Positions 31,768 through 40,914 of a stretch of DNA of 64,000 bases are shown piece by piece. The stretch is from IMG/VR virus record IMGVR_UViG_3300022602_000024, positions 186,001-250,000 of that record, one strand, 5' to 3'. The notes beneath the pieces were generated by a model. The model saw nothing but the letters and a program-made list of their open reading frames with translations, was not told the DNA's origin and ran no database searches. Both the position numbers and the translations under genes were made by a program. Positions within the stretch are counted from its first letter, which is position 1, and the number at the start of each line of letters is the position of its first letter.

Positions 31768-32481
31768 ATGTTGGCACTAATTTATACACTTGTGGTCACA
31801 CATATTACCATAGTATGTGTGACTTTGTTTTTGCATCGCGGTCAAGCACATCGCGGATTTGAATTTAATCCTGTAGTCGAACACTTTATGCGCTTTTGGT
31901 TATGGCTAACCACGGGCATGATTACTAAGCAATGGGTTGCTATACATCGCAAACATCATCAATACAGTGATTTAGCAAGAGATCCACACAGTCCTGTGGT
32001 ATACGGCCTATGGCGTGTGTTGTTTGGCGGTGCTTTGTTGTATAGTTCGGCAGCCAAAGATGCGGAAATGGTTGCCCAATATGGCGTAGGAACTCCAGAT
32101 GATTGGATTGAGCGTAACTTATATACCCCACATAACTTCACTGGCATAGGAATAATGTTGCTAATAGATATGTCTATATTCGGACCATGGGGATTTGTAG
32201 TATGGGCGGTGCAAATGTTATGGATACCGTTTTGGGCTGCAGGAGTTATCAATGGTCTAGGACACTGGTGGGGTTATCGCAATGGCAATTCTAGAGACAA
32301 TAGTCGCAACTTAGTGCCCTGGGGTATTATAGTTGGTGGAGAAGAACTACATAACAATCATCATTTGAGCCCAGCAAGACCCAAGTTAAGTCTAAAACCT
32401 GGTGAATTTGATATAGGGTGGATGTATATCCGTATACTACAAGCTCTAGGTCTTGTAAAAATCAATAGGCCTCTGCAATAA
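31768..32481 (+). CDS. Membrane fatty-acid desaturase (delta-9 / DesA-like)
   Basis: His boxes LHRGQAH, HRKHH, HNNHH; EFDIGW. Confidence 0.92.
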   Translation: MLALIYTLVVTHITIVCVTLFLHRGQAHRGFEFNPVVEHFMRFWLWLTTGMITKQWVAIHRKHHQYSDLARDPHSPVVYGLWRVLFGGALLYSSAAKDAEMVAQYGVGTPDDWIERNLYTPHNFTGIGIMLLIDMSIFGPWGFVVWAVQMLWIPFWAAGVINGLGHWWGYRNGNSRDNSRNLVPWGIIVGGEELHNNHHLSPARPKLSLKPGEFDIGWMYIRILQALGLVKINRPLQ

Positions 32482-33172
32482 ACTCTGCTTCGGGAATACG
32501 TGTATGCGTATTCTTACTACCAAGCACTACAACAATTCTACGTCCCACATCAGTATCTAACATCATTACAATGCATCCGCCTGATGCGTGTATGTAACCT
32601 GTTTTGCTGACAATAAAATTGTGTCGTTTGCCAATGACAGGGTTAGTATTATATAATATTAGCCAACGACGCTTCATACGAATCTTTACAATGGGACTAG
32701 CAGCCGCATCAACAATGGGTTTATACTTACTGGCTTCGGTTACTAGTTTAACCAACTCGCCGGCAGTACTGACATTAAACACACTGAGACCAGTTGCTTC
32801 GATAAAGTGAGTATGTGTCATACCTAACTGTTGTGCTTTGGCATTCATTGCTGTGACACAAGCAGTTTTACCGCCAGGGTAATAATCGCACAACAACTTT
32901 GCTGAGTTATTATCAGATTTTACCAACGCCATCATTATGCGTTGTTCTCTACTGACTCCTATTAAGTCAGTATGTGGATTTTGATCTGCATCTAACACCA
33001 CCATGACCGTCATTAGTTTACTAATGCTAGCAATAGGACGAACTTCTTCAATATTTTCGCTTTGTAATAACTTACCTTCACCGTCGGCCACTAACCAACT
33101 TGTAGCAGTTATTGTTTTAGCAAAGGTAGGTAATACAACTGTTGTTAACAACACCAATAAAAGTTTTTTCAT
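32462..33172 (-). CDS. pbpG: Peptidase S11 D-alanyl-D-alanine endo/carboxypeptidase (PbpG-like)
   Basis: Signal peptide; SISK (SxxK), SDN, KTG. Confidence 0.88.
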   Translation of the reverse strand: MKKLLLVLLTTVVLPTFAKTITATSWLVADGEGKLLQSENIEEVRPIASISKLMTVMVVLDADQNPHTDLIGVSREQRIMMALVKSDNNSAKLLCDYYPGGKTACVTAMNAKAQQLGMTHTHFIEATGLSVFNVSTAGELVKLVTEASKYKPIVDAAASPIVKIRMKRRWLILYNTNPVIGKRHNFIVSKTGYIHASGGCIVMMLDTDVGRRIVVVLGSKNTHTRIPEAEFIAEAY

Positions 33173-33302: not shown

Positions 33303-34124
33303 TTATCGTTGTGCCATTTGGAAACGTTTTTCCAAATCTTGTCTGCGATCCAAGTGAACTGCTTTGTTTTTACCAGGGTCAACGGTTTGAGTTGCGGCAG
33401 TTACGTTGTGTTGTCCACGACGTTTTAAATCTGGTTCAACTCTATTTTTCCAAAACCATAAACTTGTGCGTAAGGCTATTTCGGGTTTGGCAACCAAGTC
33501 GGGATTTTGAACTAATCTATCATCACCAAATATGTCTCTAGAGGCTGCAGTATAGTTCCAACGTCCTGTAAGCATAATAAACCCGCGTCCTTTAAAACGT
33601 GGACCGTCTCCGGGCTTTACATTGCCTAAACTTTTGCGTCCTTCATACTGTTTGCCTGAACTGTCTTCAACTAGTTTAGTAAACATAGCCGACTCATGCG
33701 CACATGTAGCTAAGAATGCCATTAGGTATGCACCAGTTATGTGTTCTGCTTCAGCAAACTTCTTTAAGATTGGTTCCAGCGGGGATTTAGTTACAGGAAT
33801 ATACTCGTGTTTAGCAGGTGCAACACCTTTTGCTTGTTGTGATGCAGGATGTGCCGGTGCCTTCGGGTTAGCGGCTTGAACTGTTGTAGTAGCCGCAGTT
33901 GCTAACTTTTCTTTTGCATCATTTAAGAACTGAATGATAATGCCAAGTTTGTCATCCTCTACTGGCGCAAGTGACATGTTATTTTGTTTACTATAATGTG
34001 TAACAAAATCATCCAGTTCGTCAGCTTTGGTGCCTGTAACACCTGCGGCTGCCGCGGCGCCTGCACCAAATTTTCTTAGGACATCGCGTCTAGTATCTTC
34101 GTTTAATATATCATGTAGGAACAT
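33303..34124 (-). CDS. GH19 chitinase-like lysozyme with twin-arginine-like N-terminus
   Basis: AHES, YEGRKSLGN..PGDG..FKGRG..MLTGR.NY; TRRDVLRK. Confidence 0.88.
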   Translation of the reverse strand: MFLHDILNEDTRRDVLRKFGAGAAAAAGVTGTKADELDDFVTHYSKQNNMSLAPVEDDKLGIIIQFLNDAKEKLATAATTTVQAANPKAPAHPASQQAKGVAPAKHEYIPVTKSPLEPILKKFAEAEHITGAYLMAFLATCAHESAMFTKLVEDSSGKQYEGRKSLGNVKPGDGPRFKGRGFIMLTGRWNYTAASRDIFGDDRLVQNPDLVAKPEIALRTSLWFWKNRVEPDLKRRGQHNVTAATQTVDPGKNKAVHLDRRQDLEKRFQMAQR

Positions 34125-34135
34125 GAAGTATTTAG

Positions 34136-34927
34136 TTAAATACCGTCAGGTCTATACTTTGAGTTCTTTGCTATTGCGGCATTCAAAACCGCTAAATTGA
34201 TGTCTAAATCACGTGCAATCTTAGCCAAAGCGGCAGTATCCTTAGGGAAACATGCACCTCCATAGCCTCTACTGCCGTCAGGCCCGGGTACTGCCCAATG
34301 ACTAGTGCCCAAGCGTGGATCTGTTTTGGCCATATCTGCAATAGTGGCCCAATCAATACCTAGAGATTGACACAGATCGTAATATTCATTATTAACTGTT
34401 ACTTTGATTGCTAACTGTGTGTTAGCCAAATACTTGAACATACTGGCTTCGGCTACTGTGCAGTAATCAATTTTTCCGTAAAACTTAACTGAACTTTTGT
34501 CGATCAATACCTTAGTAATATCTGCTCTGAGTCCTTCAGAGCACCCAATGACCACTTTGTGTGGTTCCAAGTAATCGTTGACTGCGTTTACCTGTGTTAA
34601 AAATTCAGGCACATGAGCAAAACGTAATCCGGACTCTTTTTCTAAATGAGTGTATACTGAGGGACTTGCAGTGCTTTTACTGATTACAAGACCTCGATAT
34701 CCAAACAGTTGTTCAACGACTAACTCTAATATGCTGGTATCACAAGCACCGTCTGCACTTTGTGGTGTAGGCACACAGATAAAAATAACATCGCATTTGT
34801 CTTTTAATTCGCTAAGTGGTCTGCTGATGTCCGGATATGCGGGATCATTGATCATTAACTCATCGGGTCTATAACTTGCTGCCACTGCTGAACCTACATA
34901 GCCGCGGCCTATAATGCCTACATTCAT
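34136..34927 (-). CDS. Short UDP-glucose 6-dehydrogenase family protein
   Basis: GRGYVG, PEFL, GYGGACFPKD; lacks C-terminal UDP-binding domain. Confidence 0.85.
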   Translation of the reverse strand: MNVGIIGRGYVGSAVAASYRPDELMINDPAYPDISRPLSELKDKCDVIFICVPTPQSADGACDTSILELVVEQLFGYRGLVISKSTASPSVYTHLEKESGLRFAHVPEFLTQVNAVNDYLEPHKVVIGCSEGLRADITKVLIDKSSVKFYGKIDYCTVAEASMFKYLANTQLAIKVTVNNEYYDLCQSLGIDWATIADMAKTDPRLGTSHWAVPGPDGSRGYGGACFPKDTAALAKIARDLDINLAVLNAAIAKNSKYRPDGI

Positions 34928-34952
34928 TGAAAACTCCTAATTGAACTAATAT

Positions 34953-35180
34953 TTATTTTGCTAAAGTCAGACTGTCTTTAAAAATCTTCCAACAACTTTC
35001 CCAAGACCAACGATGACTGGCTTGTTCTACTTGTGTTCTATCCATCATTATACACTGATCCACTGCGGCACGCAAGCCCACAGATTCCGAAACCATAAAT
35101 CCAGTTATGCCTTGATCTACAACATCCTTGGTTCCTAAGTGTACATCACTAATGAAAATAGTCCTGTAAGTTTTGTTCAT
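34953..35180 (-). pseudogene. In-frame chimera: N-terminus of LpxH/PlcP-like phosphoesterase joined to C-terminus of GT4 glycosyltransferase
   Basis: YRTIFISDVHLGTKD | VVDQGITG...RWSWESCWKIF. Confidence 0.7.
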
Positions 35181-35184
35181 ATTG

Positions 35185-35219
35185 TATTTACGTAGAAGAT
35201 TGTTACAATTGTGTTACAA
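35185..35219 (-). promoter_or_regulatory. Pho-box-like repeat plus TAAATA
   Basis: TTGTAAC-acaa-TTGTAAC, 11-nt gap, TAAATA, 4 nt, ATG. Confidence 0.7.
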
Positions 35220-35221
35220 TC

Positions 35222-35788
35222 TTATTTGTTGGCCAATGGATTGTCGATGGCTTTTTGGATTTTGCTGTCTACATCTCTATTGAGTTTTTCCAATTTGGCA
35301 TCTGTAGTAGATTTTAACTTGTCCATGTCATTGCGCACTTTGTCTAGGTCGTCGCGCACATCTTTGCGCATGGCACGTATCTCTGCGTCTGTTTCACGCA
35401 TGGTTTCTTTTGAACTGCGCTCCACTGTTTCGGTAACTGATTCGTTACGACGTATGTCATTTTTTAAATCGTTTTTGATGTCACGAGTATAGTCATTGGT
35501 CTTGCCCAGAGTTTCTTCAATCACTGCCAGGCGCTTGTCGTAGTCGCTCAAGTCTGGTGCTGAGTAATCAGCAATCTTTTTCTTCATATTCATATAGTCT
35601 TGGTAAACTTGGAAACATCCGTATAGTCCACCAAGTAACGAGCTAGCCAATGTAAATGCCACCATTAGTTTTGCTGGGGTGAATTCATATCCGCCGATGC
35701 TGATAACTGTATCTTTGCTGGCATACTTTTTTACTGCTGCTTCAGCATCATCAATTTTTGCATCAACACTTTTAATTTCTTCTGACAT
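35222..35788 (-). CDS. TM plus coiled-coil hypothetical protein
   Basis: One TM, heptad-rich C-terminus. Confidence 0.75.
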   Translation of the reverse strand: MSEEIKSVDAKIDDAEAAVKKYASKDTVISIGGYEFTPAKLMVAFTLASSLLGGLYGCFQVYQDYMNMKKKIADYSAPDLSDYDKRLAVIEETLGKTNDYTRDIKNDLKNDIRRNESVTETVERSSKETMRETDAEIRAMRKDVRDDLDKVRNDMDKLKSTTDAKLEKLNRDVDSKIQKAIDNPLANK

Positions 35789-35789
35789 A

Positions 35790-37454
35790 TTATTCTCCTA
35801 TTTTGTATTGCATGTCAAGCATTTCTTGGTATAGACGTTCGCTTGCCATTTGTCTTAGTGCTCTTACGTTATCTACTGTTGCTTGATTTGCGTAGACTTC
35901 TTTGGGTGCATAAAAAGCCGCATCTCGTAGTGTGACTGAATATGCTTCAAATCCCTTTGGTTGGGTGGCCATTGCTTCGATAGTAACTGCTCCAGCGGCT
36001 TCGTTTTGCTGAGCATTACGATTTACTGTTTCTGTTTTGGTTTCTTGCAAATTGTTAGACAATTCAAATCTACTGTTCATTGCATCATTTACGGGGTTGC
36101 CGGGTCGGTTTAATCCCAAAGAGCCAACTGAGGCATCTTGTGTAGCAACTTCTGTAAATCTAGTAGCCTGTGTTGGTTGTGAAACAAAGGTTGGTGTTTG
36201 CACAGGAGTTGACTGTTGTGAAGACGTAGTATTAACAGTTATACCTGTTCCAGATGGAGCAAATGGGTTTAATCCAATTGATCCAGTAATACTTTTATTA
36301 GACAAACTGGTTGCGGTTATTGCAGAAGCCGCAGATCCCTGCATGACGCTGACGGCCAGTGCAGATGATTGTTGTGCTTGTGCAGTCGAAGCGGCCAATG
36401 ATGCTTGTGAATTTTGTAGTGCGGCTTTTTGTGTTGCTTGGTCTCTTGCTTCTGCTTGTCTTAGTGCCTTCATTGCAGTTGTAGATGGACCGGCCTTGGT
36501 ACTAGATGATGTGCTGGCAGTTGTTGGGGTAGCGGCTGAAGGTGAAGACGACGCTACTGAATCTTTAACTGTTTGTGGTACACCATCTTGTGCCGAAACT
36601 GTGCCAGTAGAACTTACATTAGCACCACCAGCATTAACTGTTGTCACACTGGTCATTGTGGGATTACTCGATGTTTGGCCAGTCGGCGGAGTCACTGCGG
36701 TTGAACTAGTAGTTACTGTAGTTTGACCAGTTTGACCAACAGTTACATTATTAGATGACGAATTTGTAGTTGTAGGAACGGTTGGTGTTGTAGTACTTGT
36801 GCCAGTTGACGAAGGAGAACTAGTATAGTTCAATGATACATTAACATCACGTACTCTCGGTCCATAGTATCCTGCCCAGAATCGATTATCTTTGCCAGTA
36901 AATGATACATCAAGACTGCTTACAGATGACAAACTATAATTGGTGGTAAAATTTTGCGTACCCGAGAATGTTTGTAAATTGATATTTGTATTGTTATAAT
37001 TGTAACTGTAACTTTCTAATGTCTGCCCATTGGCACCTTGTAGGCTGACATTGCCAGTTAATGTTCCTTGAGTAGCGCCTTCATTATCAATGGTCCAAGA
37101 ATAATTATAGCCGTTGAGTTTAATGCCAGAGCCAGCATTGGCCAACGCTGTGTTAATGCCGATTATTTGCGAAGCGGTACTGTAACCCCAAGAAAATCGA
37201 ATAGTATTAGTATCCTGATTCATTGCAGGTGCAGGACCGCCCCAACAACACTGACTTACTCCAGCAGTATTGGTATATGTTATTCCGTTCCATCCTGTTG
37301 GATTGATCAAATTTCCAGTAGAAGAAACAACACCAGTATTTGGATTTACTGTCTGTACTGTTTGTGCTTTAGAATAATTTAAAAGCAAGGATGCCAAGCA
37401 AAGCGCCAAGGCCAATATTTTTCTTAGTGTCATCAACTTTATCCTTTTCATCAT
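35790..37454 (-). CDS. Secreted S/T/Q-rich protein with N-terminal beta-sandwich (carbohydrate-binding-like) domain
   Basis: Signal-like N-terminus; FWAGYYGPRV; long low-complexity linker. Confidence 0.65.
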   Translation of the reverse strand: MMKRIKLMTLRKILALALCLASLLLNYSKAQTVQTVNPNTGVVSSTGNLINPTGWNGITYTNTAGVSQCCWGGPAPAMNQDTNTIRFSWGYSTASQIIGINTALANAGSGIKLNGYNYSWTIDNEGATQGTLTGNVSLQGANGQTLESYSYNYNNTNINLQTFSGTQNFTTNYSLSSVSSLDVSFTGKDNRFWAGYYGPRVRDVNVSLNYTSSPSSTGTSTTTPTVPTTTNSSSNNVTVGQTGQTTVTTSSTAVTPPTGQTSSNPTMTSVTTVNAGGANVSSTGTVSAQDGVPQTVKDSVASSSPSAATPTTASTSSSTKAGPSTTAMKALRQAEARDQATQKAALQNSQASLAASTAQAQQSSALAVSVMQGSAASAITATSLSNKSITGSIGLNPFAPSGTGITVNTTSSQQSTPVQTPTFVSQPTQATRFTEVATQDASVGSLGLNRPGNPVNDAMNSRFELSNNLQETKTETVNRNAQQNEAAGAVTIEAMATQPKGFEAYSVTLRDAAFYAPKEVYANQATVDNVRALRQMASERLYQEMLDMQYKIGE

Positions 37455-38442
37455 CCTTAGGCATCTTCTCTGGATTGTCTGCCCATGCTGCCTTGGCTTG
37501 TTCGCCTATCTTACCTTCATAAGGGCAAGGTGTTCCGGCCTGTGCCATGGCATCAAACACACGACGGTCCTGGCACATGGTAGCAACAGCAGCCACTTTC
37601 ATTCCCATATCGTAAAGAGTCTTGGACAATTTTAATCGTTCGCAATTCAAATCACGAACTGTACCACCAGTGCTAACACCAAATATTTGTGTTTGAACTG
37701 ATCCACTGGTACCTGTTGTACACAGGTCAGCATTACCACCCGACATCATAGCAGGTGCTATAGCAGTTGGAGGAGGTTGAATAACACGCTGAGTGATATC
37801 ACTTACGTTGTTATTGTTGTTGTTTAATGTTCCACTTTGAATGTTTTGATTGACGTTGTTATTGGTAGCGGTACTAGTGCTGGCATTAACATTGTTATTG
37901 TTGTTGGTCATTGTACCAGTGTTAACATTGTTATTGTTGTAGGTCATTGTACCAGTGTTAACATTGTTGTTATTATTAGTATTGGTACTTGTTGAAGTAG
38001 AGGTAGATGTATTAACATTATTATTATTATTGTTATTGGTCATTGTCCCATACTGATAATTTGTGTTTGTACTGGTAGATGTGTTAACGTTATTATTGTT
38101 GTTTGTTAGTGTACCACTTTGAACGTTATTGTTGGTGTAGGTAACTGACCCGCTCAATACATTATTGTTGGTCACTGTTCCACTTTGAACGTTGTTGTTG
38201 GTATTAACATTGGTAGTACCGCCACTAAGAGCGGTATTGTTATTGTTGGTAACTGTGCCACTGTTGACATTGTTTGAATTGATTGTACTAACGCTATTGC
38301 TAGTACTGTTGGTATCAACCAAACTAGATGAACTGTAGCCACCCAAAGCAGTGCTTTGGTTTATTATCGTAGGTGATGTTTGTGCAGTCGCAGACAAGGC
38401 GATCAACGCAGACATACCAATCATTATTATTTTTCTTATCAT
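37369..38442 (-). CDS. Secreted Asn/Thr-repeat protein with Cys-rich C-terminal domain
   Basis: NNNVNTGTMT-type repeats; CERLKLSKTLYDMGMKVAAV..MCQD. Confidence 0.75.
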   Translation of the reverse strand: MIRKIIMIGMSALIALSATAQTSPTIINQSTALGGYSSSSLVDTNSTSNSVSTINSNNVNSGTVTNNNNTALSGGTTNVNTNNNVQSGTVTNNNVLSGSVTYTNNNVQSGTLTNNNNNVNTSTSTNTNYQYGTMTNNNNNNNVNTSTSTSTSTNTNNNNNVNTGTMTYNNNNVNTGTMTNNNNNVNASTSTATNNNVNQNIQSGTLNNNNNNVSDITQRVIQPPPTAIAPAMMSGGNADLCTTGTSGSVQTQIFGVSTGGTVRDLNCERLKLSKTLYDMGMKVAAVATMCQDRRVFDAMAQAGTPCPYEGKIGEQAKAAWADNPEKMPKDDEKDKVDDTKKNIGLGALLGILAFKLF

Positions 38443-39869: not shown

Positions 39870-40844
39870 TTACTTAGCGTTCCATTCTGCACGGATTTTA
39901 TTTTTAACTCGGTCAGGTAAAACCAAATAATCTAAATCAGTTGCTGACTTATCGCCCTTGGTAAATGCCCAATCAAAGAATTTAGTCACTGCAGGTGTAC
40001 GGTCTAATCCTTTGTAAACAACAACAAATGTAGCACTGGTAATGGGCCAACCATCCAGGTTGTTTAAATCAACCGCAAATCCGGGAACGTCCCAGTTTGC
40101 TGATTTGGCCGAGACTGCAAATGTGGTATCATCGGGTTGAACAACTTGTCCTTTGCGATTTTTCATCACAACATAATTCATCTTGGCCTGCTTAACATAA
40201 GCATACTCTACATATCCAATGGCTCCAGGGAATTGTTGCACGTATGCAGCAACTCCAGGATTGCCTTTACCTGCCACAATACCTTCTTTACCAAAGATAA
40301 CTGTTTTACCTGTGCCCACATTCTTTTTAAATTCTTCGTTGACTTTGCTCAAGAAGTCTGTGAATACTGCGGTAGTGCCCGATGCATCACTGCGTACGAT
40401 CAGTGTGATTGCTTGATCTGGCAATGCTAACCCAGGATTTAGTTTAGCAATGGCTGCATCATTCCAGTTTAAAATTTTACGTTGGAAAATGTCTGCCAAA
40501 GTTCGTCCGTCTAGCACTAACTTGCCGGGTTCAACACCTTTGAGATTGATTACCGGAACAACACCGCCTACCGCAGTTGGAAATTGATAATAACCTTTTG
40601 CACGAATTTCATCTGTAGTAACAGGATCATCTGTGCCGGCAAAGTCCACGGTCTTTGCTTCGATTTGCTTCATACCAGCACCTGATCCCACTGGTTGATA
40701 GTTGATAGCAATACCAGTTTCCTTATTGTATTCTGCTGCCCACTTTGAATATAATGGACCTGCAAAACTGGAACCTGCCCCAGTTACTTGTGCTTGACTG
40801 ACCATAGCCACTGTGGCTAATAAAATTGCTAAGAGTTTGTTCAT
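39870..40844 (-). CDS. pstS: Phosphate ABC transporter substrate-binding protein PstS
   Basis: GAGSSF, YQPVGSGAG, DFAGTD, RSDASGTT, GAIGYVE, WPITSAT. Confidence 0.96.
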   Translation of the reverse strand: MNKLLAILLATVAMVSQAQVTGAGSSFAGPLYSKWAAEYNKETGIAINYQPVGSGAGMKQIEAKTVDFAGTDDPVTTDEIRAKGYYQFPTAVGGVVPVINLKGVEPGKLVLDGRTLADIFQRKILNWNDAAIAKLNPGLALPDQAITLIVRSDASGTTAVFTDFLSKVNEEFKKNVGTGKTVIFGKEGIVAGKGNPGVAAYVQQFPGAIGYVEYAYVKQAKMNYVVMKNRKGQVVQPDDTTFAVSAKSANWDVPGFAVDLNNLDGWPITSATFVVVYKGLDRTPAVTKFFDWAFTKGDKSATDLDYLVLPDRVKNKIRAEWNAK

Positions 40845-40868: not shown

Positions 40869-40914
40869 TATTTAAACACAAATATGTTACAGTTTTATTA
40901 CAAACTCATTACAA
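40869..40914 (-). promoter_or_regulatory. Triple Pho box plus TAAATA upstream of pstS
   Basis: TTGTAAT-gagt-TTGTAAT-aaaa-CTGTAAC (11-bp period), 11-nt gap, TAAATA. Confidence 0.85.

What the first reader, a model, noticed from the sequence alone, without database searches (positions are those of the whole stretch)
34953..35219. Deletion scar of a phosphate-starvation lipid-remodelling pair (PlcP-like + Agt-like)
The 75-aa ORF joins the first 19 residues of an LpxH/PlcP-type phosphoesterase (YRTIFISDVHLGTKD) in frame to a GT4 C-terminus (VVDQGITG...RWSW...IF), with the junction near 35124-35131. Established: Pho-regulated PlcP plus the GT4 enzyme Agt replace phospholipids with glycolipids, including glucuronosyl-DAG. 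A Pho-like box is upstream and a UDP-glucose dehydrogenase (a UDP-glucuronate source) is downstream. Inference: this lineage carried a module for freeing phosphate from host membranes, and this genome lost it by microhomology deletion (GTKD/GPKD-like).
Basis: partly seen in the sequence, partly recalled or inferred. Interest (0 to 1): 0.6.

Follow-up and report, generated by a model that had tools for sequence, protein, structure and literature searches.

The report
Deletion scar of phage lipid-remodelling genes
A 75-codon reading frame in a 354-kb freshwater jumbo phage is the dead, in-frame stump left when about 2 kb was deleted from a phosphate-starvation gene pair (phospholipase PlcP plus glycolipid synthase Agt), a pair that many related phages still carry intact behind a Pho-box promoter.

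Summary
Both the observation and the interpretation hold. The ORF at 34953-35180 (-) joins codons 1-19 of a PlcP/LpxH-type metallophosphoesterase to the last 56 codons of an Agt-clade GT4 glycosyltransferase.

- **Intact relatives.** Related viral contigs carry the two genes whole and adjacent (73 of 80 GT loci). L172, a close relative, has them at the same site, right after the conserved 188-aa gene.
- **Junction.** It falls at 35124/5-35131, in a 7-8 nt exact microhomology (CCAAGGA[T]). The plcP side reads GGAACCAAGGA-; the GT of close relative L168 reads GGACCCAAGGAT (GPKD).
- **Not a misassembly.** Three other assemblies carry the same junction. Two of them (one strain) add a +1 frameshift in the stump, so the 75-aa product is not conserved.
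- **Second allele.** L168 carries a different, independent deletion of the same cassette.
- **Pho box.** The upstream TTGTAACA-N3-TTGTAACA repeat, 10 nt before a TAAATA box, recurs before phage plcP genes and, as a triple repeat, before this phage's own pstS.

Caveats: the downstream "UGDH" belongs to a conserved short (about 260 aa) phage family without the UDP-binding domain, and is linked to the GT only in this lineage. The lipid function during infection is inferred. I found no paper describing phage-borne plcP-agt.

The parts
35201..35219 (-). Pho-box-like direct repeat TTGTAACA-CAA-TTGTAACA (11-bp period), retained promoter/operator of the former plcP gene
   Evidence: Sequence. Motif occurs 6 times in the genome vs 0.7 expected. 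Present in 18 of 57 distinct phage plcP upstream regions vs 0.5% of random windows. Same motif as a triple repeat before pstS.
35185..35190 (-). -10-like box TAAATA, 10 nt after the second repeat and 4 nt before the ATG
   Evidence: Sequence. The same spacing is seen upstream of plcP in L135, L136, L172, L195 and upstream of pstS. Function as a promoter is inferred.
35124..35180 (-). plcP-derived part: codons 1-19 (MNKTYRTIFISDVHLGTKD), holding only metallophosphoesterase motif I (D-x-H)
   Evidence: Alignment A2. Motifs II-V are present in intact relatives and absent here.
35124..35131 (-). Deletion junction: 7-8 nt exact microhomology CCAAGGA(T) shared by plcP codons 17-19 and GT codons for P-K-D. 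With the adjacent AGGA this is 11-12 of 12-13 nt.
   Evidence: Alignment A3 with L168. Loose ends at 35125 (plcP side) and at 35126, 35131 and 35136 (GT side).
34953..35123 (-). agt-derived part: last 56 codons plus stop of an Agt-clade GT4 glycosyltransferase, lying after the UDP-sugar motifs and the catalytic Asp
   Evidence: Alignment A1. 96% DNA identity to the GT remnant of L168. Motif positions in intact GTs (PMC8231724).
34136..34927 (-). Short (263 aa) UDP-glucose/GDP-mannose-dehydrogenase-like gene directly downstream; not truncated by the deletion
   Evidence: Pfam PF03721 + PF00984, no C-terminal domain. 412 viral relatives; the 80 fetched are all 256-307 aa. It follows the GT in L008 and L168.
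33303..34124 (-). GH19/endolysin-like gene, conserved downstream flank (97% identical in L168)
35222..35788 (-). Conserved 188-aa coiled-coil/membrane protein, upstream flank used as the synteny anchor
   Evidence: 564+ viral relatives. 91-100% identical in L168, L169, L170, L172.
40869..40914 (-). Supporting evidence only: triple TGTAAY repeat plus TAAATA box upstream of the phage pstS-like gene (39870-40844, -)

Best explanation
The 75-codon ORF is a non-functional deletion scar.

**Ancestral state.** An ancestor of this freshwater jumbo phage carried, just downstream of its conserved 188-aa gene, a cassette of Pho-box promoter, plcP, agt and short UGDH-like gene. plcP is a PlcP/LpxH-type metallophosphoesterase; in bacteria PlcP cleaves the phosphorus-containing head group from phospholipids to give diacylglycerol. 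agt is an Agt-clade GT4 enzyme; in bacteria it glycosylates that diacylglycerol.

**The deletion.** A single deletion of about 1.8 kb removed everything between plcP codon 19 and about codon 283 of agt. It would be about 2.2 kb if a homing-endonuclease gene sat between the two genes, as in L172. The ends were joined in frame within a 7-8 nt microhomology: plcP ...GGA ACC AAG GA(T/C) and agt ...GGA CCC AAG GAT.

**What remains.** The Pho-box promoter, the start codon, metallophosphoesterase motif I and the C-terminal tail of the GT. None of the remaining catalytic motifs of either enzyme is left. The stump is drifting: a sister strain has a +1 frameshift in it.

**Shown:** the fusion, the junction, the microhomology, the intact relatives, the independent second deletion allele, and the lack of conservation.

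**Inferred:**
- The cassette remodels host lipids under PhoB control during infection.
- The retained promoter may still drive the stump and read through into the UGDH-like and GH19-like genes.
- A double-strand break, possibly made by the homing endonuclease that occupies the plcP-agt spacer in relatives, triggered microhomology-mediated end joining.
For: **The two halves.** Residues 1-19 are 95% identical to the L004 PlcP N-terminus (A2). Residues 20-75 align end to end with GT C-termini (A1).

**Intact pairs.**
- L004 has genes of 250 and 339 aa; L007 has 262 and 335 aa.
- 73 of 80 viral GT loci have plcP directly upstream on the same strand.
- 14 of 21 bacterial plcP loci have the GT homolog directly downstream. 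This is the plcP-agt arrangement described in PMC4796936.

**Same locus.** L172 reads p554, p188 (91%), two small ORFs, plcP (261 aa), homing-endonuclease-like ORF, GT. L008 has GT then UGDH.

**Junction.** (A3) and the loose ends place it at 35124/5-35131.

**Not an artefact.** The same junction appears in IMG/VR contig L003/L169, Logan contig L281 and ENA contig L282. Run X2 spans the whole 3.5 kb in one contig.

**Decay.** L281 and L282 carry one extra C that shifts the frame, plus 3 amino-acid changes.

**Not conserved.** Only 2 hits of 41-131 aa among 5.8 billion proteins.

**No other copy.** Nothing else in the 354-kb genome matches either gene.

**Independent second loss.** L168 keeps 94 GT codons but has no plcP start and no Pho box.

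**Family assignment of the intact relatives.**
- plcP: Metallophos/LpxH-like, below the LpxH cut-offs, with all five metallophosphoesterase motifs.
- GT: GT4, with the GRVSKEKN and FPSxxDTFG motifs and His about 104 and Asp about 256, as in GTcp/Agt (PMC8231724).

**Pho box.**
Against: - No direct ancestor sequence is in hand. The plcP side of the microhomology is read from the window itself plus a 30-letter contig overhang. The GT side comes from a relative that is 96% identical in that stretch.
- No expression or enzymatic data exist for any phage copy.
- The closest named bacterial homologs seen are only about 50% (PlcP) and 37-45% (GT) identical. The experimentally characterised PlcP and Agt proteins were not available for direct comparison.
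- The homing-endonuclease trigger is pure inference.
- All read evidence comes from assembled contigs, so minority alleles and true allele frequencies cannot be measured.
Confidence: 0.93

Rival explanations
1. The 75-aa product is a genuine small protein, a new chimeric gene kept by selection. For example, it could be a Pho-induced peptide that uses the GT C-terminal helices.
For: The fusion is in frame, keeps an intact promoter and start codon, and is present in at least two strains that differ by about 1.3%.
Against: One of those strains has a +1 frameshift that replaces the last 21 residues and shortens the product to 67 aa. There are no diverged homologs of this length among 5.8 billion proteins. 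It keeps no complete domain of either parent. A one-in-three chance of an in-frame junction is not remarkable.
Confidence: 0.04
2. Assembly artefact: two real genes were collapsed at a short repeat by the assembler, and the phage actually has the intact pair.
For: The junction lies in a short sequence shared by both genes, the kind of place where de Bruijn graphs can mis-join. Contigs with GT-type and plcP-type continuations co-occur in the same runs.
Against: A 7-8 nt repeat is far below assembler k-mer sizes. The same junction is found in three other assemblies from different data sets (L003/L169, Logan L281, ENA L282), and in a single 4,176-bp contig that spans both flanks. The alternative continuations belong to diverged alleles, L168-like and L172-like, not to the same strain.
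Confidence: 0.02
3. The ORF is only a truncated LpxH/PlcP gene. On this reading the resemblance of residues 20-75 to a GT4 C-terminus is chance, and the tBLASTn hit to Synechococcus phage S-SRM01 LpxH covering residues 1-61 reflects real homology throughout.
For: tBLASTn and BLASTP aligned residues 4-61 to the S-SRM01 LpxH-like protein at 34% identity.
Against: Beyond residue 17 that alignment has no conserved motif; the GDxxD motif II is not there. By contrast, residues 20-75 are 43% identical to full-length GT C-termini. At the DNA level, all but about six bases of the stretch match the GT remnant of L168, which itself hits Pfam Glycos_transf_1 at 1e-16.
Confidence: 0.01

Closest known systems
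Bacterial plcP-agt lipid-remodelling operon (PlcP of Sinorhizobium, Phaeobacter MED193 and SAR11; Agt of Agrobacterium tumefaciens; GTcp of Pelagibacter HTCC7211). Sources: PMC4796936, PMC8231724.
   Same: Same two protein families in the same order and orientation, preceded by a Pho-box-type direct repeat. The intact phage GTs are 332-339 aa (GTcp is 334 aa) and carry GRVSKEKN, FPSxxDTFG and His about 104 / Asp about 256. Phage PlcP has all five metallophosphoesterase motifs. Bacterial plcP-GT pairs are about 50% and 37-45% identical.
   Different: The cassette is encoded by phages: 219 viral contigs for the GT, many from contigs over 100 kb. In this window it is reduced to a 75-codon stump. 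The Pho-box half-site is TGTAAY rather than the canonical TGTCAY. No biochemical data exist for any phage copy.
Pho-regulon auxiliary metabolic genes of phages (pstS, phoH, phoA in cyanophages). Named from my own knowledge of the field; no paper was read for it here.
   Same: Host-derived phosphate-stress genes carried by phages behind host-type Pho boxes. This genome has a pstS-like gene with a triple Pho-like repeat, and a phoH-like gene.
   Different: plcP-agt targets membrane phospholipid rather than external phosphate. No paper in the searched library holds 'plcP' together with 'auxiliary metabolic'.
LpxH (UDP-2,3-diacylglucosamine diphosphatase), the name given to these phage genes by automatic annotation
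   Same: Same metallophosphoesterase subfamily fold and N-terminal D-x-H motif. JGI names the relatives LpxH, and phage S-SRM01 has one so named.
   Different: Scores are 34-45 bits against equivalog cut-offs of 134-190. The genomic partner is a DAG-type GT4, not a lipid A gene.
Microhomology-mediated deletions that create in-frame fusion pseudogenes (general phenomenon)
   Same: Short direct repeat at the junction, loss of the intervening DNA, subsequent frameshift decay.
   Different: Nothing unusual. The only special feature is that intact, differently deleted and replaced alleles of the same locus all survive in related lake phages.

Membership tests
PlcP (phosphate-starvation phospholipase C, metallophosphoesterase) | Five metallophosphoesterase motifs (DxH, GDxxD, GNH[D/E], H, GHxH) | tested here: not met
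   The window ORF keeps only motif I (SDVH, residues 11-14). Intact relatives L004, L007, L145 and L172 have all five. The window copy is therefore a remnant, not a member enzyme.
PlcP (phosphate-starvation phospholipase C, metallophosphoesterase) | Sequence homology to bacterial plcP (Sebastian et al. used BLAST E below 1e-40 to MED193_17359) | tested here: inconclusive
   Intact phage proteins match bacterial plcP-position genes in Tritonibacter, Puniceispirillales, Kordiimonas and others at 46-53% identity, E 1e-73 to 1e-84. The characterised reference proteins themselves were not available to compare.
PlcP (phosphate-starvation phospholipase C, metallophosphoesterase) | Pho box upstream and a non-phosphorus-lipid synthesis gene downstream | tested here: met
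   Pho-like repeat at 35201-35219 and in 18 of 57 phage plcP upstream regions. GT directly downstream in 73 of 80 phage loci.
PlcP (phosphate-starvation phospholipase C, metallophosphoesterase) | Phospholipase C activity on PE, PG or PC | not testable with these tools
   Needs an enzyme assay or lipidomics.
Agt/GTcp clade of GT4 (DAG glucosyl/glucuronosyl transferase) | GT-B GT4 fold with motifs GRVAxEKN and FPSxTDTFG, catalytic His104-Asp256, about 334 aa (PMC8231724) | tested here: not met
   The window ORF starts after all of these; its GT part corresponds to about residues 283-339. Intact relatives meet them: GRVSKEKN/G/S at 185-188, FPSxxDTFG with Asp at 254-258, YHTKFPE His at 103-105, length 332-339.
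Agt/GTcp clade of GT4 (DAG glucosyl/glucuronosyl transferase) | Clade membership: members share 46-58% identity with each other and under 25% with other GT4 enzymes | tested here: inconclusive
   Phage GTs are 37-45% identical to the GTs downstream of bacterial plcP, including one in a Kordiimonas genome. The best NCBIfam hits are lipid-acting GT4s far below cut-off. No tree with the reference Agt/GTcp sequences could be built.
Agt/GTcp clade of GT4 (DAG glucosyl/glucuronosyl transferase) | Use of UDP-glucuronate to make GADG | not testable with these tools
   Donor specificity varies within the clade: the Pseudomonas homolog takes only UDP-glucose (PMC8231724).
UDP-glucose 6-dehydrogenase | Three domains: NAD-binding, central with catalytic Cys, C-terminal UDP-binding (PF03720) | tested here: not met
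   The 263-aa protein has the PF03721 and PF00984 domains and the GGACFPKD Cys, but no C-terminal domain. It scores 147 bits against a TIGR03026 cut-off of 190. All 80 viral relatives fetched are 256-307 aa.
Pho box (PhoB binding site) | Two or more 7-nt direct repeats with 11-bp period, replacing the -35 box, about 10 nt upstream of the -10 box, and found before Pho-regulon genes | tested here: met
   The geometry is met at 35185-35219. The same motif, tripled, precedes pstS. Related phage pstS genes carry TGTAAY or canonical TGTCAT-N5-TGTCAC repeats in the same place. PhoB binding itself is not testable here.

The most novel reading that the evidence does not exclude
Freshwater phages, many with genomes over 100 kb, widely carry a PhoB-controlled plcP-agt cassette. 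This would be an auxiliary metabolic module that converts host phospholipid into glycolipid and releases phosphorus for phage DNA synthesis, a class of phage AMG not described in the literature I could search. On this reading the cassette is a mobile, unstable island. It sits at different genome positions, is invaded by homing endonuclease or ATP-grasp genes in its spacer, and has been lost at least twice independently in this lineage. Differently deleted alleles persist in lake phages, and contig overhangs suggest that some co-occur with intact alleles in the same samples. The window's scar would then be one natural knockout in a gain/loss polymorphism tuned to phosphorus supply.
Probability: 0.5. 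Interest if true: 0.72.

Novelty: new variant of a known kind. Interest (0 to 1): 0.55.

Why it matters
By itself, the stump is an ordinary pseudogene. Its value is as a pointer.

- **A known bacterial system in a new carrier.** The plcP-agt system is known from bacteria under phosphorus stress. Here it turns up in hundreds of freshwater phage contigs, behind Pho boxes that match the one before the phage's own pstS.
- **A possible phage strategy.** If the cassette works as it does in bacteria, phages would be mining the host membrane for phosphorus. In phosphorus-limited lakes that would change how viral infection couples to phosphorus cycling and to the lipid composition of particulate matter.
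- **Natural comparison material.** Intact (L172-type), fusion-deleted (window-type), differently deleted (L168-type) and replaced (L170-type) alleles exist in closely related phages. That makes the fitness value of the cassette testable against phosphate gradients without genetic manipulation.
- **An annotation problem.** These genes are currently labelled 'LpxH' and 'glycosyltransferase' by pipelines, which hides the pathway.

Tried and rejected
**Searches that gave nothing or little**
- Megablast of 4 kb against 50,697 phage records: no match.
- Pfam, NCBIfam and PDB searches with the 75-aa ORF alone: nothing usable.
- The only PHROG hit for the ORF was noise (E 0.24).
- tBLASTn against phage records gave a weak LpxH hit in Synechococcus phage S-SRM01. 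Its alignment over residues 1-61 is real only for residues 4-17.
- An exact-pattern search for the GT-side overhang found nothing in viral contigs. The same pattern in metagenome contigs gave L168.
- PDB searches with the intact PlcP (no hit) and the intact GT (only generic GT4 C-domains) gave no structural anchor.
- Four literature searches found no description of phage-borne plcP/agt. A 2026 paper on boreal freshwater jumbophages does not mention phosphate, pstS or these genes.

**A reading I corrected**
- I first took the overhangs at 35131 and 35136 as evidence for intact GT alleles. L168 showed that at least that allele type is itself a truncated GT. Only the overhang at 35126 (VAAYPCQGPE, as in L172) and the one at 35125 (CKADQLNNF) point to L172-like or intact genes, and both are only 30-letter consensus strings.

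**Ideas rejected or left open**
- UGDH is not part of a conserved three-gene cassette: none of the 80 GT loci (L088-L167) has it adjacent, and only L008 among the 80 UGDH loci has a GT.
- Host identification was not pursued.
- The genome-collection scan used one narrow N-terminal pattern, so the roughly 50% identity to Alphaproteobacteria is not a donor inference.
- Complex prediction, structure prediction and the large representative search were not used, because nothing in the verdict depends on them.

Full report
**1. The object**

The window is bases 186001-250000 of a 354,429-bp virus record rated 98% complete; this is a jumbo phage from fresh water. Twenty public lake and freshwater metagenome runs from 19 studies hold all or part of the 3.5-kb stretch around the finding.

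The ORF at 34953-35180 on the minus strand encodes 75 aa. It sits between two conserved genes:
- upstream, a 188-aa gene at 35222-35788;
- downstream, a 263-aa UDP-glucose/GDP-mannose-dehydrogenase-like gene at 34136-34927, followed by a GH19/endolysin-like gene at 33303-34124.

The ORF matches no Pfam, NCBIfam or PDB entry on its own. It occurs once in the genome.

**2. Both halves have intact parents in related phages**

A scan of viral contigs with the 75-aa sequence returned three kinds of locus:
- a near-identical contig (L003, which contains the junction);
- contigs matching residues 16-71;
- one contig matching residues 4-75.

Reading those loci shows two adjacent full-length genes:
- L004 has a 250-aa protein starting MNKTYRTIFISDVHLGTRD and, 222 nt later, a 339-aa protein ending ...SKWTWDNCWKIFKDNL.
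- L007 has genes of 262 and 335 aa.

Residues 1-19 of the window ORF are 95% identical to the L004 N-terminus (A2). Residues 20-75 align without internal gaps to the last 56-59 residues of the GTs, with 15 invariant columns (A1).

Family assignments for the intact proteins:
- The first protein is Metallophos/LpxH-like but far below the LpxH equivalog cut-offs. It has all five metallophosphoesterase motifs.
- The second is GT4 (PF13439 + PF00534). Its best NCBIfam similarities are to lipid-acting GT4 enzymes.
- It carries the features that PMC8231724 lists for the Agt/GTcp clade: GRVAxEKN, FPSxTDTFG, His104/Asp256, 334 aa.

**3. The pair is the plcP-agt arrangement**

- Of 80 viral loci fetched with the GT alignment (out of 219 found), 73 have plcP immediately upstream on the same strand.
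- Of 21 bacterial loci found with the plcP N-terminal pattern, 14 have the GT homolog immediately downstream. These are mostly Alphaproteobacteria, including Puniceispirillales, Kordiimonas, Tritonibacter and Rhodopila. Identities are about 50% for PlcP and 37-45% for the GT.

This is the commonest plcP neighbourhood described by Sebastian et al. In that work plcP and agt were shown by mutagenesis and heterologous expression to replace phospholipids with MGDG and GADG under phosphorus deficiency (PMC4796936).

**4. The same site in close relatives**

Using the 188-aa flank as an anchor (564+ viral relatives), I tabulated what lies next to it.

| Locus | p188 identity | What follows p188 |
|---|---|---|
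| L172 | 91% | two small ORFs, intact plcP (261 aa), 212-aa homing-endonuclease-like ORF (phrog_314, E 1e-10), GT running to the contig end |
| L008 | not applicable (found through UGDH, 56% identical) | GT residues 73-334 directly upstream of the short dehydrogenase |
| L168 | 93% (GH19 gene 97%) | one small ORF, a 94-codon GT C-terminal remnant, UGDH, GH19 |
| L170, L171 | 94% | unrelated genes: LamG-like, fatty-acid desaturase, a 412-aa dehydrogenase |

L168 keeps GT sequence that the window lacks, and lacks the plcP start and Pho box that the window keeps. The two deletions are therefore independent events.

**5. The junction**

The DNA alignment of the window with L168 (A3) compares:
- window: TTA GGA ACC AAG GAT GTT GTA GAT
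- L168: GCA GGA CCC AAG GAT GTT GTA GAT

From there to the stop codon, all but about six bases match.

Contigs laid on the window give the same answer from both sides:
- GT-type contigs stop matching at 35126, 35131 or 35136.
- A contig in X6 matches from 35125 upward, and its overhang translates as C-K-A-D-Q-L-N-N-F. That is the PlcP continuation seen in L004 (HLGTRD-CKADQLNNF).

The crossover therefore lies in CCAAGGA(T), at 35124/5-35131. That is 7-8 exact nucleotides, or 11-12 of 12-13 if the adjacent AGGA is counted.

The deleted segment corresponds to 1,766 nt in L004 and about 2,180 nt in L172, which has the endonuclease gene in the spacer (my arithmetic).

**6. Real, and decaying**

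The same junction is present in:
- IMG/VR contig L003/L169 (98-100% identical);
- a 4,176-bp Logan contig (L281);
- an 806-bp ENA contig (L282).

Run X2 covers the whole 3.5 kb in one contig, with 47 substitutions and one inserted base.

That inserted base is a C inside the stump. It changes the reading frame after residue 55 and gives a 67-aa product, P0001. The same strain also has S30P, T48A and Q53H.

Among 5.8 billion proteins of 41-131 aa, the only other hit is a GT fragment on a 501-bp contig. tBLASTn with intact PlcP and GT finds nothing else in the 354-kb genome.

**7. The Pho box**

Between the stop of the 188-aa gene (35222) and the ATG (35180), the minus strand reads GA-TTGTAACA-CAA-TTGTAACA-ATCTTCTACG-TAAATA-CAAT-ATG.

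Evidence that this is a Pho-type site:
- The same design (TGTAAY, 11-bp period, often 10 nt before a TAAATA box) stands upstream of plcP in many phage loci. The strict repeat is in 18 of 57 distinct upstream regions, against 0.5% of random 103-nt windows from the same loci.
- In the whole genome the repeat occurs 6 times, against 0.7 expected (maximum 3 in 50 shuffles).
- Two overlapping hits form a triple repeat at 40885-40914, again 10 nt before TAAATA. It lies upstream of a 324-aa PBP_like_2 (PstS-type) gene.
- Of 8 related phage pstS loci, 4 carry TGTAAY repeats in that position. Three near-identical ones carry the canonical TGTCAT-N5-TGTCAC.

I take this as good comparative evidence for a PhoB-type operator. 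Binding itself is untested.

No terminator-like site lies on the minus strand between the stump and the GH19 gene. Read-through from the retained promoter is therefore possible but unshown.

**8. The dehydrogenase**

The 263-aa protein has the NAD-binding and central domains and the GGACFPKD cysteine. It has no C-terminal UDP-binding domain and scores below the TIGR03026 cut-off.

It was not truncated by the deletion. There are 412 viral relatives, and the 80 fetched are all 256-307 aa. Among those 80 loci only L008 has an Agt-like GT nearby, and none of the 80 GT loci has the dehydrogenase.

The 'UDP-glucuronate source' idea is thus a lineage-specific adjacency involving an atypical enzyme. 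It is possible but not supported beyond that.

**9. Mechanism of loss (inference)**

The plcP-agt spacer is a repeated insertion site:
- homing-endonuclease-like genes in L172 and L145 (the latter with NUMOD3 motifs; their N-terminal domains are 44% identical, E 2e-21);
- RimK-type ATP-grasp genes in L095 and L197.

A double-strand break in or near the spacer, resected and rejoined at the nearest microhomology, would give exactly the window allele. I have no direct evidence for this trigger.

**10. Novelty**

No paper in the searchable library holds 'plcP' together with 'auxiliary metabolic'. Other searches returned only bacterial work, or phage-receptor work in P. aeruginosa.

Automatic annotation names these phage genes LpxH. 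The scar itself is an ordinary pseudogene. The phage-borne, Pho-box-fronted plcP-agt cassette, and its polymorphic loss, appear to be undescribed.

**11. Limits and compliance**

- All read evidence is from assembled contigs (Logan), so depth and minority alleles cannot be judged.
- No alternative genetic code was used.
- Nothing here concerns a toxin or a virus of animals, people or crops.

Noticed in passing
window 34136-34927 (-); L008-L087: The 'UDP-glucose dehydrogenase' belongs to a large viral family (412 contigs) of short two-domain proteins (256-307 aa). They keep the catalytic GGACFPKD cysteine but lack the C-terminal UDP-binding domain of canonical enzymes of about 390-450 aa. What substrate they bind, and whether they need a partner, is open.
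   Followed up: partly
L172:2819-3457; L145:4378-5001; L095:4044-4928; L197:1653-2543: The spacer between phage plcP and agt is a recurrent insertion site. L172 and L145 have homing-endonuclease-like genes there (phrog_314; NUMOD3). L095 and L197 have RimK-type ATP-grasp genes there.
   Followed up: partly
window 39870-40844 (-) and 40869-40914: A PstS-type phosphate-binding protein gene is preceded by a triple TGTAAY repeat and a TAAATA box. Related phage pstS genes carry the same repeats or canonical TGTCAY repeats. A PhoH-like gene lies at about G000 159771-160364, with one repeat pair inside it.
   Followed up: yes
G000:C1 18574-18590 (-) and 7493-7509 (-) (loci L271, L272): Two more Pho-like repeat pairs lie upstream of genes of unknown function (360 aa and at least 810 aa, no Pfam hit). 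These are candidate further Pho-controlled phage genes.
   Followed up: partly
window 35181-35190; upstream regions of plcP in L096, L097, L135, L172 and others: The TAAATA box sits only 4-8 nt before the plcP ATG and there is no Shine-Dalgarno sequence, whereas pstS has AAGGAG. The plcP message looks leaderless.
   Followed up: no
L168:8754-8938 and L172:1843-1974: A small ORF (34-43 aa, ...KLWFKLLKKSFKHKHTEAVR) lies between p188 and the cassette in L172 and L168 but is absent from the window, where only 41 nt separate p188 from the stump. The 5' breakpoint of the L168 deletion was not mapped.
   Followed up: no
L170:2757-7056 (and L171): In phages whose p188 is 94% identical, the site holds different genes: LamG-like, a fatty-acid desaturase like window 31768-32481, a 362-aa protein with no Pfam hit, and a 412-aa dehydrogenase with the same N-terminal and central domains. 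The region downstream of p188 is a hypervariable island.
   Followed up: partly
window 31768-33172: A fatty-acid desaturase (31768-32481, +) and a D-Ala-D-Ala carboxypeptidase (32462-33172, -) lie just beyond the GH19-like gene. These are further envelope- and lipid-related genes clustered near the scar.
   Followed up: no
window 35790-38442 (-): Two large Asn/Thr/Ser/Gln-rich low-complexity secreted-looking proteins (554 and 357 aa) precede p188. Their lengths vary between close relatives (654 and 406 aa in L168).
   Followed up: no
run X1, window 33738-35131: In one lake sample, a contig matching the window from the stump (34938-35131) to the GH19 gene (33738-34135), but not across most of the UGDH gene as expected of an L168-type strain, has a mean word depth of about 25. 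Window-identical contigs are at about 6, and an L172-like overhang is also present. Contig depths cannot rank alleles, so this is only a hint that several alleles co-occur.
   Followed up: no
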